Shown here piece after piece: positions 12,212 to 46,021 of a stretch of DNA of 64,000 nt. The translations under genes were made by a program, and so were the position numbers. The notes under the pieces were generated by a model. It did no database searches. It saw nothing but the letters and a program-made list of their open reading frames with translations, and had not been told where the DNA came from. The DNA lies in IMG/VR virus record IMGVR_UViG_3300047994_000374, positions 248,001 to 312,000 of that record. One strand, 5' to 3'. How positions within the stretch are numbered: position 1 is the stretch's first letter; each line of letters begins with the position of its first letter.

Positions 12212-13441
12212 CTAGTCGCTTAACCCAGTTAATTCGGAAGGTAATTCGCTTTCTAAATCATCCCAAGGGGCTTTTTCACCCGCATCATTTGTAGCTGGTT
12301 TTGTGGCTGTGGCTGGAGCTTCTGCATCCGTATTACTTACCATGGATTCCTGAAGACTATTTTTAGCATTATTTTCGACAGTTTTTGCGCCATCTAATAC
12401 TTTCAAAATATCCTGAACATCCTTCATATAGGTTTGGAGCGCGTGTTTCACATCATCAAAATCATCCGCAACCAAGCCATACCCGCCATGAAGACCGGGA
12501 ACTTTATCAATCAAATCGCTAAATATTCCTTTATCAACTACCTGACGTTTCTTATAAAAATCCGAGCCAAACTCTTGCATGACTTTTTCTAAATATGGGC
12601 TTAGATTTATTGCAGCTGTATGTAAATTATTATAAGCCGAAACGACCGCTTGTGTTTCTTGTTTGGTTGCCATTCCTTTTAATTCATCCGCAGTTTTTGG
12701 AGCTTCTAATTCGGACAAAATAGGCTCTATGCTTTCTTCTAATGAAGCAAATTGTTCAAGACGAGCTTTCAAATCACTAACCATAGATAAAAACTCTGGA
12801 CTATATTGATTGCCCACGCCAAAATCTGTATTGGAATTTAAAAGGTCATCCAATTCTTTCATAAGCTTTTCATTATCCGCTTTGAATCCGTCTGAAATAA
12901 AGGGCAAATGATTTTTTGCGTAAATAGCGCCAAGTGTTGCGGCAATTGGAAGAATAATCGCAAGAGGACCAATGCCTTCTTTAACGATCGACTTTCCTGA
13001 TACTTGTAAAAGGCACGCATCTGCTAAACTTCTTAATTCAGATTCATTTCGGTTATCAAGATCATTGGCAGCTTTAACAAGAGAAAGAATTAACTGTTGT
13101 GCATACTTCTGTTGAAAAATTTGACCTGATGGGGTTTTATTAAGAATATGACGAATAATATTTTGGCGCTCTTGATTGGTTTCGACGAGTCCATTTAATT
13201 TATCATAAGAAGGCGCAATGACCAATGATCCAGGATGTGCAAGCTCAGAAATATTATTATCATATTGCATGTCTTTGGGAGCATCAAGTTTTAGATCATA
13301 TAATTTCGTAACTTCTTCCATGGTTCTTGAATCAGCTCGTCCTGTTTCTTCTAGGATTTGCTTTGAAGTTTTCGCATGGGAAATTAAACCCTTCTCTTCA
13401 GCGATCTTGATAAAATTATTAAATATCTCGTTTTTTTTCAT
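12212..13441 (-). CDS. Hypothetical head-module protein
   Basis: 409 aa; carries the shared AHP...GLVET and KAANDLD modules. Confidence 0.75.
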   Translation of the reverse strand: MKKNEIFNNFIKIAEEKGLISHAKTSKQILEETGRADSRTMEEVTKLYDLKLDAPKDMQYDNNISELAHPGSLVIAPSYDKLNGLVETNQERQNIIRHILNKTPSGQIFQQKYAQQLILSLVKAANDLDNRNESELRSLADACLLQVSGKSIVKEGIGPLAIILPIAATLGAIYAKNHLPFISDGFKADNEKLMKELDDLLNSNTDFGVGNQYSPEFLSMVSDLKARLEQFASLEESIEPILSELEAPKTADELKGMATKQETQAVVSAYNNLHTAAINLSPYLEKVMQEFGSDFYKKRQVVDKGIFSDLIDKVPGLHGGYGLVADDFDDVKHALQTYMKDVQDILKVLDGAKTVENNAKNSLQESMVSNTDAEAPATATKPATNDAGEKAPWDDLESELPSELTGLSD

Positions 13442-13466
13442 GTTGGGCTCTTATTATTATATTGGA

Positions 13467-14477
13467 TTATGAGGCTTTTGCGAGATCATCAATAAAGAGA
13501 TCGGCGAGTTGTTTCTTTGAGGTAAATTCTTTAGGAAAATAAATGGCGTTATTTCCTTGTGTCGTTGAGTTATAGTATTTGATTTTATCTTGGGCGGCGA
13601 GAAATCCTGGAAGCGCTTTGATCTGCTCTTCCTTGCCATCAAGACCTGAATAAACGGATTTCGCAAAATTAATAATTGTTGAATCAATGTTTTCTGGTGT
13701 ATTTTGAATGGGCAACATAAATGGAATGGGCGAGTCTGATTTTAATGGAAATTTGGTTTGTGTAGAAGTTGGTAATGATGATTGAGCGGACGGAGCGGTT
13801 TCAGATCCTGTTTGATCCAATGCATTAGGACGACCAACAAATTTATTAACCACATCGCCTGCTACAAGAAATCCCGCTGCAGAAAGAGCTACTTTAAATA
13901 TCCAGCTTAATACTTGCGTTAAAATATTAGCTGTCTTTGAAGAAGCAATGACGGAAATTGGAGCCGAAGAAAGTGAAAGTGTTTGACGATCAAAATCTTC
14001 CATGGATAAACGAACTAATTTGGCGGCTCGTAAATTCTGATCAAATGTCAGTTTTGGTTGAATGGCTTGTGAAGTTCCTAAATTGGATTGAACTGCAGAA
14101 TGAACAACAGCATCAACTTGAGATGAAGTCGTTTGCTTACCCTCTCCAATTAGCCCTTTAATGTCCGTCCAAATCGTTTGTAAGACACTATTGATATCTA
14201 AATGAAGGGTGGATGCAGCCATTCCAAAGAGCACGCCAATCCATCCAAAGCCCATTGATTTTAAAGTCATAGAAATAACGCCGGGAGCTAAAATATTAAT
14301 GATGGAACCGGCTGGATTTTTTGGATCAATATGCGCGGAAACATAATCTTTAATTTTAGAAACAAGTCCTGCCATCAATCCAGAAGCATCCGCTTTTTTA
14401 TAAAGCGATTTGTTGCCGAGAATTTCCTCAACAATCATCATGTCTGTATAAAAAGAAATGGCAGTATTCTCTGACAT
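13467..14477 (-). CDS. Hypothetical head-module protein with hydrophobic segments
   Basis: 336 aa ORF in the co-oriented cluster. Confidence 0.7.
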   Translation of the reverse strand: MSENTAISFYTDMMIVEEILGNKSLYKKADASGLMAGLVSKIKDYVSAHIDPKNPAGSIINILAPGVISMTLKSMGFGWIGVLFGMAASTLHLDINSVLQTIWTDIKGLIGEGKQTTSSQVDAVVHSAVQSNLGTSQAIQPKLTFDQNLRAAKLVRLSMEDFDRQTLSLSSAPISVIASSKTANILTQVLSWIFKVALSAAGFLVAGDVVNKFVGRPNALDQTGSETAPSAQSSLPTSTQTKFPLKSDSPIPFMLPIQNTPENIDSTIINFAKSVYSGLDGKEEQIKALPGFLAAQDKIKYYNSTTQGNNAIYFPKEFTSKKQLADLFIDDLAKAS

Positions 14478-14478
14478 G

Positions 14479-15204: not shown

Positions 15205-16055
15205 TATACCTTCTCCCCTAGTTGCGTTTTGAGGGCGGTTAAAATCTGATATAAATCTTCGTGTGGTAAATTCTTTTTACGCCATGCAAGAATTGAATCC
15301 ATATTTACAAGATCATGAACAGTTATTGGCGCTGGAGGATTTGAGCCAACCGTGACTGACATACCATTAAATTTATCATTCAATTCGGATAGACGCTCTG
15401 GAGATAATACTGCATCATTTGTTTTTAATGGCGCGAATGTTTCAGAACTTTTAATCGTATTTCTGATTTCTGTATAAAGGGAATTAAGTTGATTTAATAG
15501 TTTCGTAATTTCTGGTGCATTTTGTAATTTTTCTGCAATCGTAAATTCAGTTGGATCGTTACCAATTAAAGATTTATAAGCTTCTAGATCTTTTTGAGAA
15601 AAATCATAAACTAATGAGGGTAACTGACTTGATAAACTTAAAAGTGATGTGGCGAGAACAACTGCATTATGAAGTGCCGTGTTTGTGATTGGACCCCAAC
15701 TGCCATCTGCAAAATTTCCTTTTTCGGCGACATCTAAACGAGAGGCTTCATCACGAATAACGCGAATAAGAGTTGATGTGGTTGAATTGTCTTTATCTTC
15801 TTTGGTATCAATATTGTTGGTCGTTACATTTTTGGCGAGATTTACAAGAGCATTTTGCATGTCCTTGATAACCTTAAATGAACTTGTAGATCGCACTTGA
15901 TTTAAAGGTCCGACAACTTCATTATCATTTGGGCGCTTGTATTCATTCGTAACATTACCAGTTGGAGAATCGCTATGTTCACCGGGGAAATCAGCTAATG
16001 AATCTTGAGCCATTTTTTGAATTAACTTTGCGAGATCTTTTTTCATACGAACCAT
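15204..16055 (-). CDS. Hypothetical protein with a possible peptidoglycan-binding motif
   Basis: 'IKDMQNAL...ADGSWGPITNTAL' resembles the PG_binding_1 DG.xG..T..A signature. Confidence 0.55.
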   Translation of the reverse strand: MVRMKKDLAKLIQKMAQDSLADFPGEHSDSPTGNVTNEYKRPNDNEVVGPLNQVRSTSSFKVIKDMQNALVNLAKNVTTNNIDTKEDKDNSTTSTLIRVIRDEASRLDVAEKGNFADGSWGPITNTALHNAVVLATSLLSLSSQLPSLVYDFSQKDLEAYKSLIGNDPTEFTIAEKLQNAPEITKLLNQLNSLYTEIRNTIKSSETFAPLKTNDAVLSPERLSELNDKFNGMSVTVGSNPPAPITVHDLVNMDSILAWRKKNLPHEDLYQILTALKTQLGEKV

Positions 16056-17227
16056 TTTTGGCTAAAGGCATCTAATTTATTTTTTAATATCTCATACTTA
16101 TCGTTGTATCCTTTGACGATAAAAGGATCTGATTTGTTTTCAAGTTTATTATAATTGGTTAATGCTGTTTGTGCAAAAGGAAGCGCTTGTTGTTCTAACC
16201 AACCTCCCAATTTTGTTTGCAGTTCTTGATCGAAACCTACAGATAATCTTTCTCTATATTGCTTGATTGTGTTGATTGCAGACTGAAATTTAGCAGCAAC
16301 ATCATTTTGATTTTCAGAAACTGGCTTTGTATTGTTCGCGGTTGGTGAGCCAGCTGGAAGCGCAGGATCGTATTTTGATTTGACAGAATTTCTAAGGTTA
16401 TCTGTTTCTATTCTGCGAATATTTTCAATTATACTCTTGAAAGAATTGGCTTGCGCATAACCATAATCAAAAATTGGCATTATTTCATTTTCCCATTTTT
16501 GTTGTGTGGCGCCAGAGCTAAAAATACCGGGACTCATATCTTCTTTAAGATCATCTAGTAAATTAGTGAGTGAATTTTCCATTTCCGAAGCAGAATATAC
16601 TTTCTTATTATTTAATGTTAAGCTTAATGCATTAAACATTGCATCATTATCATTATTTTCGCCACCTGATTTTCGGGAAATATCACTATAAATTTGTCTA
16701 AATTTAGATAAAATACTTGATGCTTCTGTGTATAAGTCGTTTAATTTATTTGCATCTTGTGCGAAAACTAATTTTACAGCATTGATAATTTTTGAAGCGC
16801 TTGCAAGTTTGCCCGTTGGCTTTTTATTTACAACATCAACCATTTTAAGATGGCGAGTTAAAATAGATTCAAAGACTGCTTTATCTCCTGCAACACCATC
16901 TAATTTATGACTGCCTTTTGGATGAGCTTGATCAACAAGATCTTCGCCCGTTTCTTTGGAAGTATTATAAAGGGTATTAGCTTTTTTGTATTGAATAAAA
17001 TTATCTTCAATTTCATTCGCAAAACTATCAAACCCCTTGCTCGAAAGTCCTGCGCAAAGACGAAGGATATTTTGAGTAAGATTTGTGGATACGGTTAAAT
17101 CTTGCGGTGCTTTTTCAGATTGCTTTTTAATTGCAGGCTCATGTTTAAATGTGCCCTTTTCTTTGGCTAATTTTTCCAAAGATCTCATGATTGGACTATC
17201 GAAAAAGTCTATGTGCTTATAAGTCAT
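16043..17227 (-). CDS. Hypothetical head-module protein
   Basis: 394 aa; shares the AHP module with 12212..13441. Confidence 0.7.
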   Translation of the reverse strand: MTYKHIDFFDSPIMRSLEKLAKEKGTFKHEPAIKKQSEKAPQDLTVSTNLTQNILRLCAGLSSKGFDSFANEIEDNFIQYKKANTLYNTSKETGEDLVDQAHPKGSHKLDGVAGDKAVFESILTRHLKMVDVVNKKPTGKLASASKIINAVKLVFAQDANKLNDLYTEASSILSKFRQIYSDISRKSGGENNDNDAMFNALSLTLNNKKVYSASEMENSLTNLLDDLKEDMSPGIFSSGATQQKWENEIMPIFDYGYAQANSFKSIIENIRRIETDNLRNSVKSKYDPALPAGSPTANNTKPVSENQNDVAAKFQSAINTIKQYRERLSVGFDQELQTKLGGWLEQQALPFAQTALTNYNKLENKSDPFIVKGYNDKYEILKNKLDAFSQKWFV

Positions 17228-19454: not shown

Positions 19455-20339
19455 TCAGTCTTTTTCTTCCTCAAAATCTAATTCTTGTAATGCTGGATTT
19501 TCTAATACTTCAAGAGATTGATCTTCAACATCTAAATTTAATAAATCATCCAAATCATCGTCGCTTGAATTCAAATCAAAATCTTCCACATCCATTAAAT
19601 CCGCTAATTCAGGATCGACATCATTCTTTGTAAAAATATCGGGTTTTCTTGTTTTTTTAAGCCAGCTGTAATATTCTTTTTGTTCGTCGGTTGCGTCTGC
19701 CAAATTATCATCGTTCATATTAAAAACGGTGCCGTGGTCCTTTAAATTATCGACCATCTTTTTGGAATTTAGCTTTTTTGTGTGCCAATCCGTTTTCTTC
19801 TTATTTACTTTTTTTTTAGCAGCATTAACTGTATGGATATTTATTTCATTAGGATCAATTTTCGGAAGAATAACTAAATCATCATTCTCTTCATTTTTCC
19901 AGTCGCCATGGTGGCTTGTTTTACCCAATAAACTAATCGCAGCTTCTTCTGACATTAAATTTTTATGACCAATCATCTTGACAATATCACTTTCGGACAT
20001 GTTCAAGTTGCGTAGGGCTAAATTCATTTTGGCGATGGCAGATTTATTTCCTTCACCGAATTCATAAAGGTCGCGCATCGACAATCCGGCTTGAATAAGT
20101 GATTTAACAGATGGCATGCTTATTTCGGTATTTTCAAGGTCCAATTCGGCGCCATCTCGAGCGACTTTAACAAGAACATTTAATATTTGATTGGATACCG
20201 AAGTTAATCCAGCCTCATCTAAAAGTTTCATTGCTGTATGTATATTATCAATGGCTTTTGTTAAATCATCGTTTTCGTTCGTTGATTTAAGTGTTTCGCT
20301 CATCTTATTCATTAATTCGCTGGCAAAGATTGTTTTCAA
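19455..20339 (-). CDS. Hypothetical head-module protein with acidic tail
   Basis: 294 aa; shared 'LLDEAG....NQI...LVKVA' module. Confidence 0.7.
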   Translation of the reverse strand: MKTIFASELMNKMSETLKSTNENDDLTKAIDNIHTAMKLLDEAGLTSVSNQILNVLVKVARDGAELDLENTEISMPSVKSLIQAGLSMRDLYEFGEGNKSAIAKMNLALRNLNMSESDIVKMIGHKNLMSEEAAISLLGKTSHHGDWKNEENDDLVILPKIDPNEINIHTVNAAKKKVNKKKTDWHTKKLNSKKMVDNLKDHGTVFNMNDDNLADATDEQKEYYSWLKKTRKPDIFTKNDVDPELADLMDVEDFDLNSSDDDLDDLLNLDVEDQSLEVLENPALQELDFEEEKD

Positions 20340-20741: not shown

Positions 20742-21428
20742 TTATTTTTTGGATGATTTTGAGGCTTTTTCTTTATCAGCCTTCTCTTTGGCTTTTTCTT
20801 TTGCTAATTTATCTTTAGCTGACTGCGCATCTTTCTTTTCTTTTTCTTTCGCTTTTTCTTTAGCAGCCTTTTCTTTTTCAGCTTTTTCTTTTGCTTTAGC
20901 TTTGTCTTTGGCGTCGTTTGAATCTTTTTTGGAATCTTTCTTTGATTCTTTGTCTTTCTTTTTTGCTTCGACAATCAGTGATGCAATTTTGAGAATCATT
21001 TCTGATCCTTTACCGAGATTGAGTTGATCACATGCAGCTGACGCCGTTAAAAGACCGTCAATCGCCATATCAAATGCGGCTGATGACTTTAATTCTTCGT
21101 CCTCTTCTTTCTTGTGTTTGCGAGCATCGTTCTCATCTGAACTCTCTTCTTCTTTCTTGTGACGACGAGCATCATTGTCATCCGCACTCGAAGAATCCGA
21201 GGAGCTTTCTTCCTCTTCTTTTTTATGCTTGCGCGCGGCGTTTGCATCATCTGCACTCGCTGAATCGCATTTGCATTTTTCTTCTTCGCACTTTGAACAT
21301 TTCGCTTTGCGGGCGTCATTTTCATCACTTGCATTTTTAACACGTCCACCGAAAAGGGTTTTGTGTTCTGCGCTGTTAAGGGTCGCATTCATTGAATTGG
21401 CGACGAAATCTGATATACTTTTTGACAT
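20742..21428 (-). CDS. Highly charged, repeat-containing head protein (Lys/Glu-rich tail)
   Basis: Likely start MSKSIS at 21428 (AAGGA RBS); repeats of D[DE]N[DA]AR[KR]HKKEE. Confidence 0.7.
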   Translation of the reverse strand: MSKSISDFVANSMNATLNSAEHKTLFGGRVKNASDENDARKAKCSKCEEEKCKCDSASADDANAARKHKKEEEESSSDSSSADDNDARRHKKEEESSDENDARKHKKEEDEELKSSAAFDMAIDGLLTASAACDQLNLGKGSEMILKIASLIVEAKKKDKESKKDSKKDSNDAKDKAKAKEKAEKEKAAKEKAKEKEKKDAQSAKDKLAKEKAKEKADKEKASKSSKK

Positions 21429-21441
21429 GTTTATTTTTCCT

Positions 21442-24400
21442 TTAGAAAGAACCCTTTTTGTTGCCAAATAACCCTGAGAGTGATGCGACCATATCATTTT
21501 CAACTAATCGCTTTGATGGTGATTCGTCATTTGAAAAGCCGACATTTGGAAGGCGTGAAGCTTGTTTTTGCATAAGTGGTTCATGCTTTGCGACGACGCG
21601 CTTGAATGATTCAAATGAAACGTCATCATATAACATAATTTCATCGACTTGACCTTTAACCTGAGCCTTTTCACGACCACAGAGACCACGATCAATCATA
21701 TCATAAGTGAGTTCATAGGCGCGAGCAATCTTGAGTTTAAACTTGTTGAGGTCAGCTTCGAGCTGCGCTTTAACATGCTCTTTAACTAATTCTGAAGCGA
21801 ATTCTGAACCGCCGTCAACTTGACCGTAGAATTTTTTCCAGTAAGCGACTGCATCTTTATCAAGACCTTCTGCTACGAGAGCATCAACATCTTTTGCATC
21901 TAATTTACCTTCTGAAACTAAACGCTGAATTGCTTCGGCTTCTTTGCGAACCTTTGGTGGAGCTTTTGCAAGATCCATGAAGGCTTTGTTTTGCTCTTCT
22001 TGAGTTTCAACTAAACCAAGATTACCTGATGGCTTGGTATCAAGTTTCGTTTGACCGTCTGCAAGTGAATCAGCTTTATCGAGCATATCACTAAATTTTG
22101 CTTTTGACATGTCTTGAGCTTCACCATCATCTTGTTTACCAAGAGCATCGGCAGCCAATTTCGCTCTAAATGATGCACGAGCTTCTTTGGTTTCGAGTGA
22201 CGCTTTTTTAACTTCTACTTGAGCACCCATGGGGACATCCTTTGGAACCGCTTCGCCTGGAGCAACTTCGAGCTTCATATCATTGTCATCCGCATGCATT
22301 TCTTCATCTTTGTCGTCTAACATTTCTTTTACGGATTCTAAATCTGCATTGGTGTCACCGATTAAATTCATAAGATCGGCACCCTCTGCTAAATGTGTAT
22401 CTTCGCTCATTGACTCTCCTTCAGCTAAAGCCTCCAGTTCTGCTTCGATTTCCGCACGTTTGACGATGGCATTAGTGCCTCGGGCGTACTTTACGAAAGC
22501 AGTCATTAGTGTTAATCCATCGGCAATTGAATGTTTGGTTTCTTTAACCGCATCTTCAACAATAGTGCCGACAAAATCTCTATTTGCATCTGAAACCGCG
22601 CCCTTATCATACATCGAGCTAATCATTTCTAACTCTTCTTGATGATTGGTGAGGTTTGCAATCGTCTCTTTCATTGCTTGAACGAGTTGCCCATTTAATT
22701 CTTTACGGGTTGATTTGAGTGCCGCAGTGCCGAAATTATCGCTTGCCGCTGCGCCCATTTCTGGAGCTGGTTCGGCGCCCATTTCAGCTTGTTCACCAGT
22801 TAATGCACGAACTGATTCGACGAGATCTGAATTAAGGTCGCGAGCTTTTTCTGCAAGTTCGAGAACATTTTCTTTTGGATCGCCAGTTTTGCCCGTATCT
22901 TCAGCTTCTGGCGCACCGAGGTCAGCAGGTGATGCTGCGTCTGGAGCGGCTGGTGCGGCTGGTGCCATTGGAGCTGCTTGTGATTTCTTAATTAATGCCG
23001 AAACGCCCGAAGCGCCTGCAACCTTAACTTTTTCAATCAATGAAGTGCCGAAAGGCTTGGTTGCAATTTGATCATAAAGCATTTCCGTGCGACCACCAGT
23101 GAGTTCATCAACTGATGCAGTAAGGATAAGTTTATCACCAAGGAATACTTCCCATGCTGAATTTGCTTTGTCCTGGGTGCCGTCTGATTTTGCAGCCTTT
23201 ACGAAACGAGCACGGAGCGATGCACGTTGAAGTAATTCTTTACGCTTGAGTTCATCTGGAACCGTAACTGAAGCAGGTGATGGATGAAGGCTATCAACTG
23301 ATCCGACGCCTGGGAATGGCTTTTGACCAACCATTTGTTTATCTTCTTTATCGCGATCAAGCTCATTGAGTTTGTCCGCTGGATATTTAACTTTACCTGG
23401 AGTTGGGGTACCGGGATTTTCTTTTCCGTCGCCGTTCTGGAAATATGCCTTTTTATCTTGAAGGGCGCCTTTTGCGAGTTGAAGAATTGCTGCTCGTTTG
23501 ACGGCACGATCTTCTGACTCTGCTCGGGCAAGCATCTTTTTACGAGTAAGCTCATCCGCAGTTTCGGCTGAGGCTGGTGATGGATGCATCCCATCAACTG
23601 CGCCAACTTCTGGAAATGGAGCTTGACCATTCATGTGCTTGTCCTCTTCTCTTGCCGTTTCATTAAGAGGATCTTTTGGATATTTAACTTGTCCGGGGGT
23701 TGGTTCATTGACTCCGCCAGCGCCTTGGTAGTAACCTTTTTTATTCATATCAGACATCATTTCCTCTTGTGTTTTTGAAGTTTTAGACAATTTTTCCAGA
23801 CTTTCTTTCATTTGATTTAGTTTTGCTTCAATAGTCAATGCGACTTCTTTAAGCTCTTCAATCGAATCCTTTTCCAAATTTACTGCTGCGTAACGTGCTT
23901 GCTGTGGTGACTGTAGCGATAAACCAGAATCGGTGGGAGTGCCCTCTGACATTGCGATGGAGCCCGACGATTGATTGTATGCAGAATTATTACTATCTTT
24001 TTCAGATTTTTTTGCTAAATCATAAATATTTGATAATTTGGCAAATGCATCATCAAGGTCTTGTTTAAATTTAACAAGATCATTTGCATTCACATTGATT
24101 TGCATATGATTAGGACCTTCATTACTTTCACTGTCATTTGCGTCTAATTGCGCATTAAAAGTAAGATCTGCTAATTTTTCGATTTCATTCTGTTTGCTTT
24201 CGACATAAGCGTTTAGATGATTCGCGGCCGCAAGAACTTGTTTAATGTGAGCTTTTGGATCGGCGCCATTAACAACGATAGAAAGTTCAATTGGATTTAA
24301 ATCGACGTTAATTTCACCGTAACCTGATTTTGTTTTCATATGTGAACAAAAATCAGACTCAACGCGAGCAACTTTCGCACAATCATAACAAATAGCTTGA

Positions 24401-35049: not shown

Positions 35050-35682
35050 TTAGCTTTTGTTAGGTAATAATCCATGGAAAGCATCATTATTACTTGGATC
35101 TACTTCAGAGTTCATATCGCGATCTCTCAGTCCTAAATTACTGAAATTCTGATGCGCTGCAGGATGATTGGCTTTCATTTCCAAATTCATTTTGCTAACT
35201 AATCTTAATAGTTTTTCATCATCCCATGCGCTTTGATCTTGAACATCATTTCCATGAATAGCCTGCAAGCGAGAAATAATGGCTGGTAAAGAAGAATTGC
35301 CATTTGTGTCTTTAATAATATTTTCAAGCGTTTGCAATACATGTGGATTTTCATGAATGGCTAATGGAGTTGTATCTTCTTTACTTTGAGCGACAACAAT
35401 TTTATTTCCGGCTTCATTCTGTGATTGTTTGCTAATATTTTTGAGATAATCCGTTAGTCCGCTTCTTTGTTTCATATCTTCAACGGCAGCATCAACGGTC
35501 GAATATTTTGACTTTGAGCCATTCATGATTGAATTTAGTTCATCAAAAATATTATCTTTTCTTGATTGAACTGCACCTTTTTCAATTTCAGAATTATAAC
35601 GATCTGACCAAGTACTATCATATTCACTTGAATCTGATTGTCGGGAAATAACGGATTGATGTCGATTATATTTATTTGTCAT
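35050..35682 (-). CDS. Hypothetical protein
   Basis: 210 aa ORF upstream of the terminase. Confidence 0.7.
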   Translation of the reverse strand: MTNKYNRHQSVISRQSDSSEYDSTWSDRYNSEIEKGAVQSRKDNIFDELNSIMNGSKSKYSTVDAAVEDMKQRSGLTDYLKNISKQSQNEAGNKIVVAQSKEDTTPLAIHENPHVLQTLENIIKDTNGNSSLPAIISRLQAIHGNDVQDQSAWDDEKLLRLVSKMNLEMKANHPAAHQNFSNLGLRDRDMNSEVDPSNNDAFHGLLPNKS

Positions 35683-36642: not shown

Positions 36643-37413
36643 TTAAATCCAGGTATTGGAATAAGTGTCATTGCCTGAATTTGTAGTGCCATAATCAGGA
36701 TTTTCAATATCTATAGTTTCAGATCCGTCAAGAGCAGAATTTGGAACAATGCCATCTGGAAGTCCAAAAACTCCTTCACTTTCGGCAGCGTTTAAATATT
36801 TGTTCATCAGTAATTTAAGTGTTTTTTCGTCAATAATATCAGAGGGATATTCTTCAGCTACAAGATCATTGGCGAAATCCAACGCTGATTCTTGTTTATT
36901 ATCTTCGTCAGGCAAAGGATTATAACTGAAATTCCCAAATGGCACAGAGTTTGGATAACTTTCAATTTCTCCGGGACCGACCTCTCCTGGAAATTCGGCG
37001 TTCTCTCTGCTTCCTGGAGTCGATCCAATTTCTTGAGGCATTAAATAAGAAGTTGAATCTCCTGCCAACATAGGAGTAACTTGCTCATCTCTTGGAAAAT
37101 CGATAGCAAATTTTGTAATTCTTGATAATAACAATATTCTTGCTTTGCTTTTTTTAGCAGCTTCTTCGGGAATATAACTGTCACTTGCTTTATATTTATC
37201 TTTCATTTTCTTGCGGCGAGCTTTTAAAAAATCGGAAACACTTTTATAATCTTGAAGTCCTGAGTATCCTGATCCTGGTCCTGTATCACTATTTCCAACA
37301 TAATCGTAATTATGAAATAATGGCGTTTCAAATCTTGGCTGAATTCGAATAGCTTTTTCTTTTTTATATGTATGCGGTTCTTCCGTCCCTTGAAAATAAG
37401 ATTTTTTATCCAT
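36643..37413 (-). CDS. Hypothetical acidic protein
   Basis: Starts MDKKSYFQG, a motif shared with the protease repeats. Confidence 0.7.
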   Translation of the reverse strand: MDKKSYFQGTEEPHTYKKEKAIRIQPRFETPLFHNYDYVGNSDTGPGSGYSGLQDYKSVSDFLKARRKKMKDKYKASDSYIPEEAAKKSKARILLLSRITKFAIDFPRDEQVTPMLAGDSTSYLMPQEIGSTPGSRENAEFPGEVGPGEIESYPNSVPFGNFSYNPLPDEDNKQESALDFANDLVAEEYPSDIIDEKTLKLLMNKYLNAAESEGVFGLPDGIVPNSALDGSETIDIENPDYGTTNSGNDTYSNTWI

Positions 37414-38189: not shown

Positions 38190-39848
38190 TTATACGGTTG
38201 GAGGTAATGGCGTTGGAGCCGGTGGGGGAGCCGCAGGTTTTCCATCGAGATCTTCGTCAATTTCTACATTTGGAGTTTCTTTTGTAGCAAGATCCGCTTC
38301 TTCATTTTCTTGCTTCTTGCGATTTTCTTTACGTGCTTTTTCTTTATCAGCGTCAAGTTGCAAGTTATTTTTTACAGATTGAACGGCTGGATTATCTTCT
38401 TGCTGCCCACCTGTCAAATCAACATCGCCGCCTGCTGACGCTCCTCGTAATTTGGCAAGCATATCATCTACGCGAGTTGAAATATAATTGTTCGAATCCA
38501 ATGCTTTATTTTGTGCTTCACTTAAATTACTAAAATAAGAAGCAATTCCAAGTTGTTGCATCATAATATCAATTAGAGCAAGCTGACGAGGGATTTCTCG
38601 AACTTTAAATATTTTTGATAAGTCTTCAAGTTTCGCAACAACATCGTCAATTGTAATATTGGCAAGTGCTGCGTCGATTTTTTCATCGACCGCATTGCCT
38701 TTTGCTGCTTCTGCTTGTTCGTCGGTAGGTACATCATCCTCCGAAACTTCCAAAGGCTTCTCGGTGGCAGGTGGAGCGACTGTTGGGGATGCTGGAGGCG
38801 GAGGGACAACTTGAGCTTCCGATACCATGAGGACGTCATCTTCGACTTCAAGAACATCGTCGGCTGCCTCTAAATCTTTAGGATCTGTGTCGCCCGCAGT
38901 ATCCATTTGAACAAGAAATTCTTCAATACCTTTTGATTTTGGCTTATCTTGAACTTCAGGTGGAGGAGCTTTAAAGGCGCTTACTGGGGGCTGATCTTTA
39001 TTTTGATCGTTAAATGAAGATGTTTGCACATTTGGAACGCCGGGAATTGTTGCGGGTAGTCCTCCAGGTGCGCCTTCAGGTGTCGTTGGCGAAGGTGGGG
39101 GAGTGGCATTTAAATCTGGATCTGCTGTTTTGTATAAAAATTCTGCCGACTTTACTAAACCTCTGCGGCGTAGAACATTGCTTTCACGAACGATCATATC
39201 TTCATACAAACGAACAGATGAGCTTATTTTATTGACAAGTTGAATTTTCTTTTTTAATGAGTAAATGGATTCCATTAAATCTTCAAGCTCATTTCCTGCG
39301 AAAAGCTGTCCCTCTTGTGAGCGAAGTAGTTTCTCAGCAGAATCTAACCGACCAATAATTTTACTTCGTTGCGCCTCAATGGTTTGTTTTTTTTGTGCTT
39401 TTTGGGCTAAATCCTCTTGAACATTTTCGATGGAATGATGATCTGATTTTAATTGTGGAGCTGGAGGATCCTTTTTAAGGTGCAAGAAATATCCTGGTGA
39501 GCCATTTTCATACCATTGCGCAGTTTTATATTTCAATTGATTTCCTTCTTCGTAATATCTCATCCAGTTCAAAAAGTCGAAAGTTTCAGTTGGATTCCAC
39601 TCTTGAGTAACCGATTTAATGGCTTCTCTTCTTGATATTCCATTCTGCTTTTCTTGAGTATATAGCTTTTTAACGGTAGCTACCCACTTCTCTAAATTGT
39701 AATTCGTTGGGGTATACATGACGGCATTATCATTTGGATATGCCTCTTTATTGAGCCTATCATAATTAATGGCGTGAAAATCGAAAAATGAAAACAAGGA
39801 CGCAATTTCTTGTTCTAACCCATATGAATAAAGATTTTTTTTATTCAT
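38190..39848 (-). CDS. Hypothetical head-module protein (552 aa)
   Basis: Multiple KEAY/KTAQ/KSAE/KTAD motifs and Pro-rich linkers. Confidence 0.7.
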   Translation of the reverse strand: MNKKNLYSYGLEQEIASLFSFFDFHAINYDRLNKEAYPNDNAVMYTPTNYNLEKWVATVKKLYTQEKQNGISRREAIKSVTQEWNPTETFDFLNWMRYYEEGNQLKYKTAQWYENGSPGYFLHLKKDPPAPQLKSDHHSIENVQEDLAQKAQKKQTIEAQRSKIIGRLDSAEKLLRSQEGQLFAGNELEDLMESIYSLKKKIQLVNKISSSVRLYEDMIVRESNVLRRRGLVKSAEFLYKTADPDLNATPPPSPTTPEGAPGGLPATIPGVPNVQTSSFNDQNKDQPPVSAFKAPPPEVQDKPKSKGIEEFLVQMDTAGDTDPKDLEAADDVLEVEDDVLMVSEAQVVPPPPASPTVAPPATEKPLEVSEDDVPTDEQAEAAKGNAVDEKIDAALANITIDDVVAKLEDLSKIFKVREIPRQLALIDIMMQQLGIASYFSNLSEAQNKALDSNNYISTRVDDMLAKLRGASAGGDVDLTGGQQEDNPAVQSVKNNLQLDADKEKARKENRKKQENEEADLATKETPNVEIDEDLDGKPAAPPPAPTPLPPTV

Positions 39849-42435: not shown

Positions 42436-43158
42436 TTATTTATTATTTAAACGTCCGTCCCTTGAATCGAAAAATGTGGCAAAAAATCGGTTATCCAATC
42501 CCAAATCTGATTGAGCTGAAACGCTTCCACCAGGTACTTTAGTTCCATTTAAAAGCGTAAACCCATTTTCGAAATCGTAATGTTTATGATCTAAACTACA
42601 TATATAAACCGAGTCCGATCCTTCAAGCTTAAACATACCTGTACCAGGATGATCTGGGCACGACCGCGCCTTCAAGGGCGAACCTTCAATTGGCATATTT
42701 TTTACATATTCTGATTTTTCAACTTCTTTTGCTTGATCGGCAGTCTTGTTATAATCTTTTAATTTTTCTGCAGTTCCTTGGTACTTGAGGCGCAATGTTT
42801 CAAGACGCGCATCTTCTTCGGCTTTTTTATTACGAATGGCATCTTTTGGGGCGGCGATTGTTAATAGAAGCTCATCAAGAACACTTGCTTGTTTTCTCAA
42901 TGCAGGATCATCTGAACTATCCAATGCAGTCGCTAAATTTGCAATCTCTTCAATGGACTCTGGTGTAATAACAGATTCGGCTTCTGGTTCAATTGCATCT
43001 ACTTCTGACGCTGCATTCTTTAATAAGTCGGCAGCCTGAACTAAAGCGTGAGCAACCACTTCCAAACACTTTTCATCGTATTCAGAAAGGAGCAATGCTG
43101 GATTTTCGACATCTTCTAAATCATTTGCATAAGCTTTTAGTAAATCAGATATCCGCAT
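42436..43158 (-). CDS. Hypothetical protein with shared helical module and C-terminal Zn motif
   Basis: LATALD...KQASVLD; CPDH...C. Confidence 0.7.
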   Translation of the reverse strand: MRISDLLKAYANDLEDVENPALLLSEYDEKCLEVVAHALVQAADLLKNAASEVDAIEPEAESVITPESIEEIANLATALDSSDDPALRKQASVLDELLLTIAAPKDAIRNKKAEEDARLETLRLKYQGTAEKLKDYNKTADQAKEVEKSEYVKNMPIEGSPLKARSCPDHPGTGMFKLEGSDSVYICSLDHKHYDFENGFTLLNGTKVPGGSVSAQSDLGLDNRFFATFFDSRDGRLNNK

Positions 43159-43958: not shown

Positions 43959-43963
43959 TATTT

Positions 43964-45550
43964 TTACCCCAAAAAGATTTTAGCATTCATAAATGATGCG
44001 CCTTCGTAAGTTTCTGACATTCCTCTGCGATATAATGGACGACAATTTCCATGGTCGTCTTGATATACCTTATGAGCTGGAAGTCCGGTATGTGAACAAA
44101 TGGGATGTTCTGAAACGGCACTTTTAACCAATGCTGAACATTTGGTCTCTTCGACTGGTTTAACTCCAGCAAGGGCGCTCTTATAAATAGCAAATCCACT
44201 CGCATAAGCTTTTTCATCTTCACCATGAGCTAATACATTGAGGGCATCTTCAGCTTTTACTAAATTACCCTCTAAAACAGCTTCTCGAATATTGTTAATA
44301 ATTTCGCTTGGCTTTAAAGATGCCATTGCTGAAGAAACCGCGGCAACACGGATATCTGAAGCATTTTCAGAAACAAGCTCATTAATTCCAGCTTTATCAA
44401 ATGTTTTTACTGACCCGTTGCATAAAAGAACATTTGGTTTAATCATCGTTCCATTTGCAAATTTAACTGGAACAGTAAAAGCAACTCGACCACCATTTAA
44501 TGATACTGCGTAAAATAAAGTGGTCTCATCTGATTTGGCAAGCTTCATTTGAGGATGAGAGTGACCAAAACTGGCTAATTCACGAGCTAAATGTCGATGA
44601 GCAGCCGATACTTTTTCTTCGCCGAAATTCCATGAAGCAATTCCAAGTGGTGATTCAAATTTCTTTTCAAAGCTTTCAAATTCGTCAGAGGTCGTTTCCA
44701 TCTCAGACACTGCTGCATTGACGATCTTTTGACCTTCAGAGCTATTTGCGAAGAAGCTGGAAGTTCCGTAGCTTGAATTATTAAAACGCGCTAAAGCCAA
44801 TTCTGCTTCGCTTATGGTTGAACTCAAAACACCTAACACAATCTCACTTCCAATTTTAAGCTGTGAGCCCGCATTTGAAGTAATGTAGTTACGAATGTTT
44901 GTGTTGTTTAAATCTTGTGGTCCAGTGTTACCCATAAATACAGAGGCTTCTTTAACATCTGATCTAACAACTTCAACGGGGACATAAAAACTAGTTAAGC
45001 CTTTTGGAGTGTCATAATCTGCTTTAACAATGATAAATTTCTCATTTCCACTACCAACAGACAAATGTTGTGGGTTAAGGTTCCAAAGTTCAAGGGCGTT
45101 GGCGACGATTTTAAGGGCTCGATTAGCTGTACTTTGAGCATAAGTTTTAAGTGGAGTGTCCTTATCAAGCGCTGAATTTAATGCATTTGCGAGGATTTGA
45201 TCGCCAATTTCGTAGGTTGGAAGCTCTGCTGAATCATCTCGCTCCTTATAAGTCACTGGGGAAGCGGCTGGAGTAATACCTAATTCTTCTGCAAAAATTT
45301 CTGCAGCTTCAGTTCCATAAGAAAATAGCTTATTGTATAAATTACGAAAGTCTGCTCGACGGATTAAATCAGTTCCATTTTCAGACATCTTCTCGACGAC
45401 TCGATATAACTGACCTAGCGTCTTATCATGAGGGGCAACTTCAATGGCATGAGCTAATTTGATAGTCAATGCTGTGGTTGATAACTTATGATTGTCGTCA
45501 ATAGATTTCACTGTCGCAGTAACTAACTGATTAAATTTATCTAAGCTCAT
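43964..45550 (-). CDS. Hypothetical protein with internal duplicated domain
   Basis: SFYVPVEV and AFTVPVKF repeats; Cys/His-containing C-terminus. Confidence 0.7.
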   Translation of the reverse strand: MSLDKFNQLVTATVKSIDDNHKLSTTALTIKLAHAIEVAPHDKTLGQLYRVVEKMSENGTDLIRRADFRNLYNKLFSYGTEAAEIFAEELGITPAASPVTYKERDDSAELPTYEIGDQILANALNSALDKDTPLKTYAQSTANRALKIVANALELWNLNPQHLSVGSGNEKFIIVKADYDTPKGLTSFYVPVEVVRSDVKEASVFMGNTGPQDLNNTNIRNYITSNAGSQLKIGSEIVLGVLSSTISEAELALARFNNSSYGTSSFFANSSEGQKIVNAAVSEMETTSDEFESFEKKFESPLGIASWNFGEEKVSAAHRHLARELASFGHSHPQMKLAKSDETTLFYAVSLNGGRVAFTVPVKFANGTMIKPNVLLCNGSVKTFDKAGINELVSENASDIRVAAVSSAMASLKPSEIINNIREAVLEGNLVKAEDALNVLAHGEDEKAYASGFAIYKSALAGVKPVEETKCSALVKSAVSEHPICSHTGLPAHKVYQDDHGNCRPLYRRGMSETYEGASFMNAKIFLG

Positions 45551-45559
45551 TTGTCCCTT

Positions 45560-46021
45560 TTAGAGTAATTCTGGATACTTCTTATATGCGTTTATTTTGG
45601 CAGTTGGGCTTAATTCATTCAACAGCGCTTTCACTAATTTCTTGCTTTCGGCAAGTTTTGAAGGAAGATAGACTTCAGCTTCATTGAGTTCCGTTGGAGG
45701 GATGCCCAATTTCTGTGATGCTAAACAAACGAGTGGATCACCTTTATAGGAAACTTGTAATTGACCAGCTGATTTAACAAACTTTACGGACCAGTCATTT
45801 GCCGTTTTAACTTCAAGGTCTTCATCACCATAAAGGGCAACAATATAGTCACCATCATCAGAGCTTTGAACTTCCCAAAGCTGAGCTGCCTTATCTGCGT
45901 CTTTGAATCGTACTACGCCGAACGCAATTGACTCGAGTTGGTCTTTAACATCTGCCAACCGATATGCTTTCTTAGTAATGGTCGTATGTAAAGCGTCATA
46001 ATTCACTGTAAATTTTGGCAT
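45560..46021 (-). CDS. Hypothetical protein
   Basis: 153 aa; KKAY, KTAN and KSAG motifs. Confidence 0.7.
   Translation of the reverse strand: MPKFTVNYDALHTTITKKAYRLADVKDQLESIAFGVVRFKDADKAAQLWEVQSSDDGDYIVALYGDEDLEVKTANDWSVKFVKSAGQLQVSYKGDPLVCLASQKLGIPPTELNEAEVYLPSKLAESKKLVKALLNELSPTAKINAYKKYPELL

What the first reader, a model, noticed from the sequence alone, without database searches (positions are those of the whole stretch)
12212..46021. Shared K-x-[A/G/S] motif across ~20 head-module proteins: candidate prohead-protease cleavage code
A mostly hydrophobic-K-x-A/G motif sits at N-termini or domain boundaries of otherwise unrelated proteins: FIKIAE, LYKKAD, ISKKAQ, IQKMAQ, LVKVAR, LFKFAQ, VKNAS, MSFIKIG, MSFIKRG, MFNKLG, MDKLAQ, FIKEAG, LKKVAQ (portal), LVKEAQ, LNKEAY, YKTAQ, LYKTAD, RKQAS, YKVAE, VKTAN, LTKYAS (capsid), and about 10 times in the protease-scaffold. 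This parallels T4 gp21 and phiKZ gp175 processing of many head proteins after Glu, but with a different specificity. It would mark a large set of packaged or ejected proteins.
Basis: partly seen in the sequence, partly recalled or inferred. Interest (0 to 1): 0.72.

Follow-up and report, generated by a model that had tools for sequence, protein, structure and literature searches.

The report
Candidate capsid-protease cleavage motif, jumbo phage
A short motif (hydrophobic-x-Lys-x-Ala/Gly/Ser) recurs near the N-termini and linkers of at least a dozen unrelated head proteins of a 394-kb phage and is conserved in its relatives; it is probably the cutting signal of the phage's capsid-maturation protease, though no cleavage has been shown.

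Summary
The quoted strings are real, but the loose K-x-[A/G/S] pattern is barely above composition (z=2.0). A sharper form, [L/F/I/M]-x-K-x-[A>G,S]-[Q/G/E/S], holds up.

- **Enrichment:** it occurs in the first 70 residues of 13/31 head-module proteins against 30/378 others. It is the top pattern of 5,118 enumerated, and the head block is the genome-wide maximum.
- **Conservation:** in about 160 related metagenomic loci the K and the small residue are conserved islands in hypervariable, indel-rich flanks (portal, MCP N-extension and at least 10 unknown proteins). The replication module shows no such effect.
- **Independence:** the motif-bearing proteins are not paralogues by BLAST.
- **Protease:** the 1174-aa protein at 21442-24966 has an N-terminal domain with the T4 gp21/herpesvirus assemblin fold (Z 10.2) and invariant His132 and Ser183. 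Sites sit just after the protease core and about 40 residues from the C-terminus.

Best reading: a prohead-protease processing code, possibly doubling as a capsid-targeting signal, with a specificity not found described in the searched literature. By analogy I place the cut after the small residue (P3=Lys, P1=Ala/Gly/Ser). The cleavage and its position are inferred, not shown.

Verdict: a new variant of a known kind, and testable.

The parts
21442..24966 (-). Protease-scaffold fusion protein, 1174 aa. The protease core is about aa 49-246; the long C-terminal part is presumed scaffold.
   Evidence: PHROG 18299 head maturation protease, 1e-12. AF2 model pLDDT 88. T4 gp21 Z 10.2 and herpesvirus proteases Z 7-10. 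H132, S183, C193, C196 and C207 are invariant in 75 homologues. The C-terminal part matches phage G gp21. 19 K-x-A, about 12 conserved.
24166..24183 (-). IEKLAD (K264): site at the end of the helix that follows the protease core; candidate release-site analogue.
   Evidence: K 0.92 and A 0.83 in close orthologues, flank identity 0.38. K-x-[AGS] lies 8-30 aa after A246 in 53/75 divergent homologues against 41% in shuffles, mode at +18.
21556..21573 (-). MQKQAS (K1134): site 41 aa from the C-terminus; candidate maturation-site analogue.
   Evidence: K 0.96 and A 0.88. In 116 divergent homologues the last Phi-x-K-x-[AGS] lies a median 43 aa from the C-terminus (64% within 25-60 aa against 17% in shuffles), followed by a conserved x-x-P-x-V-G.
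24856..24873 (-). FYKMAG (K34): site in the helix preceding the protease core.
   Evidence: K 0.96, A 1.00. Helix 26-42 in the model; residues 1-20 have low pLDDT.
24943..24960 (-). FIKIGE (K5): motif at the extreme N-terminus of the protease.
   Evidence: K 1.00, Gly (within A/G/S) 1.00, flank identity 0.36. K5 is invariant in 75 homologues.
25016..25168 (-). 50-aa ORF that starts with MSFIKRG, repeating the protease N-terminus.
   Evidence: Six-frame search. No orthologue test was done.
31783..31800 (-). Portal LKKVAQ (K81): the clearest island.
   Evidence: Across 67 distinct orthologues K is 1.00 and +2 is A46/G14/S7; Q at +3 is invariant in the orthologue sequences displayed; flanks are hypervariable with indels (flank identity 0.20-0.24). 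Homology to the phage G portal begins at aa 101.
9069..9086 (-). Major capsid protein LTKYAS (K24), in exon 1 and outside the flagged range.
   Evidence: K-Y-A is invariant in the 40 orthologues analysed. It lies in a 44-aa N-terminal extension that phage G gp27 lacks. The phage G MCP chain in PDB 6WKK has 280 of 282 residues.
6947..9149 (-). Split major capsid gene. Exon 1 ends at ...MANPI (about 8925). The intron carries a LAGLIDADG endonuclease ORF (7838-8764). Exon 2 starts at RRNLDY (about 7740) and runs to 6947.
   Evidence: tblastn with phage G gp27, junction against uninterrupted orthologues, Pfam LAGLIDADG_2 1e-35.
13397..13414 (-). FIKIAE (K12) in the 409-aa protein 12212-13441.
   Evidence: K 1.00, A/G/S 1.00; the conserved block F-x-K-I-A-Q/E-E-K-G is followed by an indel-rich region.
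14388..14405 (-). LYKKAD (K27) in the 336-aa protein 13467-14477.
   Evidence: K 1.00, A/G 0.95, flank identity 0.30, indels on both sides.
16005..16022 (-). IQKMAQ (K14) in the 283-aa protein 15204-16055.
   Evidence: K 0.86, A/G 0.79, flank identity 0.12, followed by a hypervariable Pro-rich stretch.
17162..17179 (-). LEKLAK (K19) in the 394-aa protein 16043-17227. Orthologues carry a second site near aa 33.
   Evidence: The alignment shows S-L-E-K/R-L/V-A conserved, and a second x-K-x-A about 14 aa later in 8 of 9 orthologues.
20157..20174 (-). LVKVAR (K58) in the 294-aa protein 19455-20339.
   Evidence: K 0.80, A/G/S 0.80, flank identity 0.14. Only 10 orthologues.
21327..21344 (-). RVKNAS (K56) in the 253-aa protein 20742-21503.
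   Evidence: K 1.00, A 1.00, followed by a hypervariable region with large indels.
30199..30216 (-). MDKLAQ (K3): extreme N-terminus of the 449-aa protein 28867-30216.
   Evidence: K 0.97, A/G/S 1.00, flank identity 0.32.
29755..29772 (-). FIKEAG (K151) in the same 449-aa protein.
   Evidence: K 0.95, A/G/S 1.00, preceded by a variable, indel-rich linker.
35569..35586 (-). IEKGAV (K35) in the 210-aa protein 35050-35682.
   Evidence: K 0.92, +2 A32/S12, flank identity 0.22-0.26.
35970..35987 (-). LVKEAQ (K243) in the 340-aa protein 35685-36707.
   Evidence: K 1.00, A/G 1.00. It follows a hypervariable Lys-rich linker with indels.
37102..37119 (-). ITKFAI (K101) in the 256-aa protein 36643-37413.
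   Evidence: K 0.94, A 0.90. In several orthologues large insertions begin directly after the Ala.
39141..39158 (-). LVKSAE (K233) in the 552-aa protein 38190-39848. That protein also has K34 (partly conserved) and K108 (invariant).
   Evidence: K233: K 0.97, A 0.94, flank identity 0.36-0.40, upstream of a hypervariable Pro-rich linker.
42883..43026 (-). LLKNAA (K47) and LRKQAS (K89) in the 240-aa protein 42436-43158.
   Evidence: K47: K 0.93, A 0.78. K89: K/R 1.00, A 1.00, but in a conserved context (0.74-0.76).
3975..3992 (-). MVKNAF (K48) in the 248-aa protein 3381-4127; a further candidate outside the flagged range.
   Evidence: A conserved K-x-[AGS] island, flank identity 0.35.

Best explanation
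The motif [L/F/I/M]-x-K-x-[A>G,S]-[Q/G/E/S] is the recognition and processing signal of this phage's prohead protease, which is the assemblin/gp21-fold domain at the N-terminus of the 1174-aa protease-scaffold protein (21442-24966).

Proposed mechanism:
1. During prohead assembly the protease trims the portal N-terminus (about 83 aa), a short N-terminal propeptide of the major capsid protein (about 26 aa), and the N-terminal propeptides or linkers of a dozen or more otherwise unrelated head-module proteins.
2. It releases itself from the scaffold at a site just after the protease core (K264).
3. It detaches and fragments the scaffold, including a site about 40 aa from the C-terminus (K1134).
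4. The conserved N-terminal segments that end in the motif probably also serve as capsid-targeting sequences, as in the T4 internal proteins.

By analogy with the P3-x-P1 grammar of T4 gp21, phiKZ gp175 and herpesvirus assemblin, I place the scissile bond after the small residue (P3 = Lys, P1 = Ala/Gly/Ser, P5 hydrophobic).

Shown here: the motif's enrichment, its selective conservation in head proteins only, its positions, and the protease fold. Inferred: that the sites are cleaved, by this protease, and at that bond.
For: **Enrichment.** Phi-x-K-x-A z=6.1 against shuffles. 13/31 against 30/378 proteins carry it in the first 70 aa, p=1.7e-6, with Arg, Glu, Gly, Ser and Leu controls flat. It is the top of 5,118 unbiased patterns, and the head block is the genome-wide maximum in the block null.

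**Conservation.**
- K and A of K-x-A are more conserved than other K and A in head families (p=3e-5 and 1e-5) but not in 17 replication-module families (p=0.43 and 0.31).
- Conserved K-x-[AGS] islands: 23 in the head module (2.83 per 1000 aa) against 2 in replication (0.44), and 0.25-1.48 for 11 control patterns. Fisher p=6e-5 against controls and 2e-3 against replication.
- The alignments show the islands next to hypervariable or indel-rich linkers in the portal, the MCP extension and at least 10 unknown proteins.
- The logo gives extra information at -2 (hydrophobic) and +3 (Q/G/E/S), positions that were not used to select the sites.
- There is no paralogy among the carriers.

**Protease.** T4 gp21 Z 10.2, VZV protease Z 10.1, and about 35 more herpesvirus protease entries. 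H132 and S183 are invariant.

**Scaffold.** In 116 divergent homologues Phi-x-K-x-A is 3.0x shuffles in the scaffold part (875 against 294), controls are 0.8-1.3 and the Arg variant 1.7. The C-terminal site is positionally conserved and the post-protease site partly so.

**Published precedent.** In T4 the processing determinants lie at residues 8 and 10 of a 10-aa capsid-targeting sequence. T4, phiKZ and SPN3US cleave many head proteins, and propeptides carry redundant sites (PMC9026906, PMC10052503).
Against: - There is no proteomic or biochemical evidence for any mature terminus in this phage or its clade.
- The motif carries only about 10 bits. Good matches also occur outside the head module (66 of the 96 best PSSM hits), so the motif alone does not identify substrates.
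- Within-genome significance after multiple-testing correction is marginal (Bonferroni about 0.04).
- Several conserved K-x-A lie in well-conserved, probably folded contexts (portal K315; protease K41-V-A-P with Pro at +3) and are unlikely to be cut.
- Sites at residues 3-7 (MDKLAQ, MSFIKIG) would remove only 5-7 residues, which is unusual.
- Phage G, the nearest cultured relative, shows no overall enrichment (36 against 27.9 expected), and its deposited MCP sequence (PDB 6WKK) spans 280 of the gene's 282 residues.
- Helical scaffold periodicity could contribute to the enrichment in the scaffold region.
Confidence: 0.58

Rival explanations
1. The motif is a docking or capsid-targeting signal that is not cleaved. 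It would be a short linear motif that binds the scaffold, portal or protease and recruits diverse proteins into the prohead, and it stays in the mature proteins.
For: - The same conservation and position data apply.
- The segments N-terminal to the motif are themselves well conserved amphipathic stretches, for example S-E-I-F-E-S-F-V-K-I-A in the 12212 family.
- Motifs at residues 3-7 make little sense as propeptide removal.
- In T4, targeting and processing determinants are separable within the capsid-targeting sequence (PMC9026906).
Against: - A pure docking motif does not explain sites at internal linkers followed by hypervariable or insertion-prone sequence (36643 K101, 35685 K243, 38190 K233).
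- It does not explain the many redundant copies in the scaffold, or the positions just after the protease core and about 40 aa from the scaffold C-terminus, which resemble protease-scaffold processing sites.
- A small residue at a fixed spacing from an anchor residue is the usual grammar for proteases of this fold.
Confidence: 0.2
2. The sites are cleaved by the prohead protease, but directly after the invariant Lys (P1 = Lys), with the small residue at P2'.
For: - Lys is the most strictly conserved position (0.98 in the logo).
- Arg partly substitutes: 42436 K89 is K/R 1.00, and Phi-x-R-x-[AGS] is 1.7x shuffles, as expected for a basic P1 pocket.
- From my own recollection, not checked here, HK97 gp5 is cut after a Lys.
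Against: - The known specificities for this fold place the anchor at P3 and the cut two residues later (T4 residues 8 and 10 of the capsid-targeting sequence, PMC9026906; herpesvirus Ala|Ser from my own knowledge).
- A strongly selected small residue at P2' would be unusual.
- In the 36643 family, insertions start after the Ala, not after the Lys.
Confidence: 0.12
3. The motif has no shared function. It reflects Lys/Ala-rich amphipathic helices typical of scaffold-like and internal head proteins, plus post-hoc pattern selection.
For: - The loose motif is at chance (z=2.0).
- A-x-K is also somewhat over-represented (99 against 75).
- The Bonferroni-corrected p is only about 0.04.
- The AF2 model puts K34, K41 and K264 in helices.
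Against: - Mirror and neighbour controls ([AGS]-x-K, K-[AGS], K-x-x-[AGS], K-x-[LIV], E-x-[AGS]) show neither the enrichment nor the conservation.
- The islands lie in otherwise hypervariable, indel-rich and probably disordered segments.
- The Ala/Gly/Ser interchange at one column with invariant Lys (portal) is not a helix-propensity signature, because Gly and Ser disfavour helices.
- Replication-module proteins of the same genomes show no effect.
Confidence: 0.08

Closest known systems
T4 gp21 and phiKZ gp175 / SPN3US gp245 prohead proteases with multi-substrate head processing
   Same: - The same protease fold (T4 gp21 Z 10.2).
- One short, low-information motif shared by many unrelated head proteins, mostly defining N-terminal propeptides.
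- Redundant sites in scaffold or propeptide regions, and a motif near the protease's own N-terminus.
- Likely overlap with a capsid-targeting function (PMC9026906, PMC10052503).
   Different: - Those enzymes all cut after Glu (L/I-x-E in T4; a short motif ending in Glu in phiKZ and SPN3US). Here the motif has no Glu: the anchor is an invariant Lys and the second fixed position is Ala/Gly/Ser.
- There is no detectable sequence similarity to gp21 (no Pfam or PDB sequence hit).
- The protease carries a Cys-rich insert (C193, C196, C207) and is fused to an approximately 900-aa scaffold-like region.
Herpesvirus assemblin-scaffold polyprotein with release and maturation sites
   Same: - Same fold (VZV, PRV, HSV, HCMV, KSHV and EBV proteases, Z 7-10).
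- Protease fused N-terminally to the scaffold.
- A candidate site just after the protease domain and another about 40 aa from the C-terminus, ahead of a conserved tail.
- A small residue, mostly Ala, often followed by Ser, at the proposed P1/P1'. The herpesvirus consensus hydrophobic-x-Ala|Ser is from my own knowledge.
   Different: - The proposed P3 is Lys rather than Val/Leu/Ile.
- Many additional substrates beyond scaffold and protease.
- The post-protease site is only partly conserved (53/75).
- No sequence homology; this is a bacteriophage, and the cut position is not shown.
Bacillus phage G head module (gp14 portal, gp19 protease, gp21, gp27 MCP)
   Same: - The nearest cultured relative: portal 33% identity, protease 34%, MCP 52%.
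- gp19 has K-T-A and K-I-A before the protease core and LEKVAS and LLKIAS after it (7 sites against 2.2 expected).
- The portal has K18-Q-A near its N-terminus.
   Different: - In phage G the protease (300 aa) is not fused to the scaffold.
- Its MCP lacks the 44-aa N-extension, and the deposited PDB 6WKK chain has 280 of 282 residues.
- There is no overall motif enrichment in its head module (36 against 27.9).
- No published cleavage sites were found in the papers I could read.
Protease-scaffold proteins of actinophages Myrna (gp97) and Rhodococcus E3 (gp77)
   Same: - A homologous protease core with the H...S-M-G arrangement and a Cys-rich insert.
- Long fusion proteins (895-1211 aa) next to the MCP.
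- Myrna gp97 has 26 K-x-[AGS] against 16.9 expected.
   Different: - Very distant (27-30% identity over about 160-180 aa).
- Enrichment there is weak and was not tested by conservation.
- An apparent MCP site match (K-L-A-S-I-L) proved not to be positionally homologous.

Membership tests
Assemblin/gp21-fold prohead serine proteases (phage prohead and herpesvirus proteases) | Characteristic protease fold | tested here: met
   AF2 model pLDDT 88, above 95 for aa 49-245. T4 gp21 (5JBL) Z 10.2, rmsd 2.8 over 132 of 165 residues. VZV protease Z 10.1. About 35 further herpesvirus protease entries at Z 7-9.5. Unrelated MCE-domain hits start at Z 6.6. Foldseek probability up to 0.98.
Assemblin/gp21-fold prohead serine proteases (phage prohead and herpesvirus proteases) | Conserved catalytic His followed by catalytic Ser | tested here: inconclusive
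   H132 and S183 (in V-S-M-G) are invariant in 75 homologues at 39-65% identity and are also present in phage G, Myrna and E3. The order and the 51-residue spacing fit the family as I recall it. I could not check residue-by-residue superposition on the gp21 or assemblin catalytic residues, and the third triad member is not assigned.
Assemblin/gp21-fold prohead serine proteases (phage prohead and herpesvirus proteases) | Gene located in the head module between portal and major capsid genes | tested here: met
   Gene order on the minus strand is TerL 32071-35031, portal 30256-32034, protease 21442-24966, MCP 6947-9149.
Assemblin/gp21-fold prohead serine proteases (phage prohead and herpesvirus proteases) | Proteolytic activity on head proteins | not testable with these tools
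   Needs biochemistry or virion proteomics.
T4/phiKZ-type multi-substrate head processing | One short motif shared by many unrelated head proteins, mostly near N-termini | tested here: met
T4/phiKZ-type multi-substrate head processing | Cleavage C-terminal to Glu (P1 = Glu) | tested here: not met
   The logo has K at position 0 and A/G/S at +2, with no Glu position. Phi-x-E-x-[AGS] is 0.95x shuffles, and E-x-[AGS] islands run at 0.49 per 1000 aa against 2.83 for K-x-[AGS].
T4/phiKZ-type multi-substrate head processing | Mature virion termini map to the motif | not testable with these tools
   No proteomic data for this clade. The papers on phage G and Myrna that I read give no termini.
Herpesvirus-type protease-scaffold polyprotein | Protease fused N-terminally to a scaffold domain | tested here: inconclusive
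   The fusion is real and typical of the clade: most of the 150 homologues are 1,100-1,500 aa. The scaffold role of aa 270-1174 is inferred from a match to phage G gp21, its position and its motif density; it was not tested.
Herpesvirus-type protease-scaffold polyprotein | Processing site just after the protease domain (release site) | tested here: inconclusive
   K-x-[AGS] lies 8-30 aa after the core in 53/75 homologues against 41% in shuffles, with the mode at +18. Cleavage is not shown.
Herpesvirus-type protease-scaffold polyprotein | Processing site near the C-terminus ahead of a conserved tail (maturation site) | tested here: inconclusive
   The last Phi-x-K-x-[AGS] lies a median 43 aa from the C-terminus; 64% fall within 25-60 aa against 17% in shuffles, followed by x-x-P-x-V-G. 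Cleavage and MCP binding of the tail are not shown.

The most novel reading that the evidence does not exclude
A large, mostly uncultured clade of jumbo phages (1,486 protease cluster representatives at E<=0.001) uses an assemblin-fold prohead protease with a previously undescribed specificity, hydrophobic-x-Lys-x-(Ala/Gly/Ser)|. It would combine herpesvirus-like release and maturation-site processing of a protease-scaffold polyprotein with T4-like cleavable targeting peptides on a dozen or more unrelated cargo proteins. If so, the packaged head proteome of these phages could be read from sequence, and foreign proteins could be targeted into their capsids.
Probability: 0.42. Interest if true: 0.75.

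Novelty: new variant of a known kind. Interest (0 to 1): 0.62.

Why it matters
Prohead-protease cleavage codes are known experimentally for only a few systems that I found or recall: T4, the phiKZ/201phi2-1/SPN3US group, herpesviruses, and single sites in a few small phages. In those systems the code has been the key to identifying internal and ejected head proteins and to engineering protein packaging.

This window offers a sequence-derived, evolution-backed candidate code for a different and very large jumbo-phage lineage whose head proteins are almost all unannotated. If it is confirmed:
- It would assign a role to a dozen or more 'hypothetical' proteins as prohead cargo or substrates.
- It would define mature protein boundaries for structural work.
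- It would show how far P3/P1 specificity has diverged within the assemblin fold (Lys/small residue against hydrophobic/Glu or hydrophobic/Ala).
- It would make the herpesvirus-phage parallel in protease-scaffold processing testable in a phage.

Tried and rejected
- **Megablast of the portal/TerL region against cultured phages:** no match.
- **Pfam and PDB sequence searches with the protease domain or its profile:** nothing significant.
- **First AF2 model, from 25 close orthologues:** unusable, pLDDT 47.6. It was replaced by a 75-sequence alignment.
- **Complex prediction of the protease core with the portal linker (aa 66-100):** no verdict, score 0.02. This counts neither for nor against.
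- **Genome-wide PSSM scan:** circular for the head region and too low in information to call substrates elsewhere.
- **Apparent MCP site match with actinophages E3 and Myrna (K-L-A-S/H-I-L against K-Y-A-S-I-L):** rejected as positional homology, because HMMER aligns that Myrna segment inside the phage G N-arm.
- **Phage G head module:** no overall motif enrichment, so I do not extend the claim to phage G.
- **Literature searches for a Lys-x-Ala prohead-protease specificity, phage G processing or Myrna/E3 termini:** nothing found. The phage G capsid structure paper is not held.
- **Rfam:** no hit at gathering threshold in the window, so the MCP intron's class is not assigned.
- **Assignment to the 'Jug' gut phages (PMC12880540):** considered because of genome size and the abundance of introns and inteins, but not tested.

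Full report
**Context**

The window is bases 248001-312000 of a single 394,192-bp contig. The genome is about 35% G+C, and 516 of 597 called ORFs are on the minus strand.

Head-module landmarks:
- TerL at 32071-35031, the portal at 30256-32034, and an SLT transglycosylase at 27722-28864.
- A 1174-aa protein at 21442-24966 whose N-terminal part matches 'head maturation protease' PHROGs.
- A split major capsid protein (MCP) outside the flagged range. Exon 1 lies within 8916-9149 and exon 2 at about 7740-6947, separated by an intron that encodes a LAGLIDADG endonuclease.

The nearest cultured relative is Bacillus phage G: portal 33% identity, protease 34%, MCP 52%. More than a hundred IMG/VR contigs, some 200-480 kb long, carry portals about 70% identical. 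The phage therefore belongs to a large, uncultured jumbo-phage clade. Its size and its abundance of introns and inteins recall the 'Jug' gut phages (PMC12880540), but I did not test that.

Every quoted string exists. Two details differ from the finding:
- MSFIKRG starts a 50-aa ORF (25016-25168) just upstream of the protease.
- LTKYAS lies in MCP exon 1, outside the stated coordinates.

The motif as written, K-x-[A/G/S], is close to the composition expectation: 215 observed against 194 +/- 10.5 in shuffles, z=2.0.

A sharper form is enriched:
- Phi-x-K-x-A totals 50 against 22.6 +/- 4.5 (z=6.1), a density 3.1-fold that of the rest of the genome.
- It lies within the first 70 residues of 13/31 head proteins against 30/378 others (odds ratio 8.4, p=1.7e-6). 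Variants with Arg or Glu in place of Lys, or with Gly, Ser, Leu or Glu in place of Ala, are flat.
- An unbiased enumeration of 5,118 three-position patterns puts Phi-x-K-x-A first (p=7.4e-6), which is only about 0.04 after Bonferroni correction.
- In a sliding-block null over the genome, the head block is the maximum (13 hits). No non-overlapping block of 31 proteins exceeds 7.
- The carriers are not paralogues by BLAST.

**Evolutionary test**

I collected orthologues of 45 window proteins from 177 related loci.

In head-module families:
- The Lys of K-x-A is more conserved than other Lys in the same proteins (relative conservation +0.19 against +0.025, p=3e-5).
- The Ala is more conserved than other Ala (+0.145 against -0.046, p=1e-5).

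In 17 replication-module families from related genomes there is no effect (p=0.43 and 0.31).

I defined an island as Lys at least 85% conserved, +2 in A/G/S at least 85%, and flank identity below 0.55. There are 23 such islands in the head module (2.83 per 1000 aa), against 2 in replication (0.44) and 0.25-1.48 for eleven control patterns. Fisher p is 6e-5 against the controls and 2e-3 against replication.

The alignments make this concrete:
- **Portal.** Residues 55-100 are hypervariable and full of indels, yet Phi-x-K-x-[A/G/S]-Q persists. Lys is invariant across 67 distinct orthologues and the small residue is 46 Ala, 14 Gly and 7 Ser; Gln at +3 is invariant in the sequences displayed. Homology to the phage G portal starts just downstream, at aa 101.
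- **Unknown proteins.** The same island pattern is seen in the 12212, 13467, 15204, 16043, 19455, 20742, 28867 (two sites), 35050, 35685, 36643 and 38190 proteins.
- **36643 family.** Large insertions begin directly after the Ala.

Of the 15 quoted instances testable in orthologues, 13 are conserved, one is partly conserved (LNKEAY) and one is not (LYKTAD). The logo from the 23 islands adds a hydrophobic residue at -2 (L/F/I/M) and Q/G/E/S at +3. Neither position was used to select the sites.

**The protease**

Sequence methods give no Pfam or PDB match. With a 75-sequence alignment drawn from an exhaustive search (1,486 representatives at E<=0.001, mostly 1,100-1,500-aa proteins), AlphaFold2 gives a confident model: pLDDT 88 overall and above 95 for aa 49-245.

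The best structural matches are T4 gp21 (Z 10.2) and VZV protease (Z 10.1), followed by about 35 more herpesvirus protease entries. Unrelated folds begin at Z 6.6.

H132, S183 and three Cys of an insert (C193, C196, C207) are invariant. I could not verify residue-level superposition on known catalytic residues.

**Sites in the protease-scaffold protein**

- K5 and K34 lie before the core, and K264 lies at the end of the helix that follows it.
- In 75 divergent homologues, a K-x-[AGS] lies 8-30 aa after the core in 71%, against 41% in shuffles, with a mode at +18.
- In 116 full-length homologues, Phi-x-K-x-A is 3.0-fold over shuffles in the scaffold part (875 against 294). Controls are 0.8-1.3 and the Arg variant is 1.7.
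- The last site lies a median 43 aa from the C-terminus (64% within 25-60 aa against 17% in shuffles), ahead of a conserved x-x-P-x-V-G tail.

This layout resembles the release and maturation sites of herpesvirus protease-scaffold polyproteins. That comparison rests on my own knowledge of those systems.

**The capsid protein**

Compared with phage G gp27, this MCP has a 44-aa N-terminal extension containing L-[VT]-K-Y-A-[AS], invariant in the 40 orthologues analysed. The phage G MCP chain in PDB 6WKK has 280 of the gene's 282 residues. Removal of a short propeptide here is plausible but unproven. The whole extension is well conserved, so this site is a weaker island (flank identity 0.57).

**Interpretation**

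The most economical explanation is a prohead-protease processing code, probably overlapping with capsid-targeting peptides as in the T4 internal proteins. There the processing determinants sit at residues 8 and 10 of a 10-residue targeting sequence (PMC9026906). In T4, phiKZ and SPN3US many head proteins share one short motif, with redundancy in propeptides (PMC9026906, PMC10052503).

The specificity differs from those systems. There is no Glu; instead an invariant Lys is followed two residues later by a small residue. By analogy with the P3-x-P1 grammar of this fold, I place the cut after Ala/Gly/Ser. A cut directly after Lys remains possible, since Arg partly substitutes.

The rival readings are a docking signal that is not cleaved, or a helix-composition effect. 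The second is disfavoured by four observations: the mirror and neighbour controls, the Gly/Ser interchange, the disordered flanks, and the null result in replication proteins.

**Limits**

- There are no mature termini for any member of the clade.
- The motif carries only about 10 bits, and good matches are scattered genome-wide (66 of the 96 best PSSM hits lie outside the head block).
- Some conserved K-x-A lie in folded, conserved contexts and are unlikely to be substrates (portal K315; protease K41-V-A-P).
- Phage G shows no overall enrichment.
- Several genes in the flagged range are not evidently head proteins.
- A complex prediction of the protease with the portal linker gave no verdict.

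**Novelty**

I found no description of a Lys-x-small-residue specificity for a prohead protease, nor any processing data for phage G, Myrna or E3, in the literature I could search. I rate this as a new variant of a known kind: multi-substrate head maturation by an assemblin-fold protease. The evolutionary support is good, but there is no biochemical proof.

Noticed in passing
window 6947-9149 (-): The major capsid gene is split by an intron of about 1.2 kb carrying a LAGLIDADG_2 + HTH homing endonuclease ORF (7838-8764). Exon 1 ends at ...MANPI and exon 2 starts at RRNLDY. Orthologues in IMG/VR are uninterrupted. Rfam gives no group I or II hit at gathering threshold, so the intron class is open.
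   Followed up: partly
window 32071-35031 (-): The 986-aa TerL carries an in-frame LAGLIDADG/Hom_end insertion (about aa 404-474) inside the ATPase domain, which looks like an intein. In most relatives TerL matches only in pieces.
   Followed up: no
window 11026-12207 (+): The only sizeable plus-strand gene in the block is a TnpB-type protein (HTH_OrfB_IS605, OrfB_IS605 and Cas12f1-like TNB domains), inserted in the head-gene block between the MCP region and the 12212 head-module gene.
   Followed up: no
window 25016-25168 (-): A 50-aa ORF directly upstream of the protease gene begins with MSFIKRG, almost the same heptapeptide as the protease N-terminus (MSFIKIG). It may be a small protein sharing the N-terminal signal, or a remnant of a duplication.
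   Followed up: no
window 60500-61747 (-) and 47771-48763 (-): The phage encodes a full three-domain trigger factor homologue (Trigger_N, FKBP_C, Trigger_C) and a DnaJ homologue (J domain, CXXCXGXG, DnaJ_C).
   Followed up: no
window 53989-59108 (-): The DNA polymerase III alpha-like gene appears to be interrupted. The 897-aa ORF 56415-59108 is followed by a 391-aa ORF with no Pfam hit (55235-56410) and a 417-aa ORF (53989-55242) that begins mid-domain. This suggests an intein or intron with an endonuclease.
   Followed up: no
window 2-2593 (-): An ORF of at least 864 aa, open at the window edge, has long collagen-like G-x-x repeats and is probably a fibre protein. G+C rises to 46% here against about 35% elsewhere.
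   Followed up: no
window 25859-26605 (-) and 37406-38173 (-): A tyrosine-phosphatase-like protein and a tRNA nucleotidyltransferase-like protein sit inside the head gene block. Both are conserved in relatives (59% identity).
   Followed up: no
homologues P0013, P0014, P0019, P0025 and others: About 20 of the 150 best protease homologues match in two stretches, with insertions of roughly 180-390 aa before the catalytic core (query aa about 104 aligns to residues about 236-497 of those proteins). They may be inteins or endonuclease insertions in the protease gene.
   Followed up: no
window 17272-18642 (-) and 41464-42417 (-): Free-standing GIY-YIG (456 aa) and HNH (317 aa) homing endonuclease genes lie between head genes. 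Few relatives have them at these positions.
   Followed up: no
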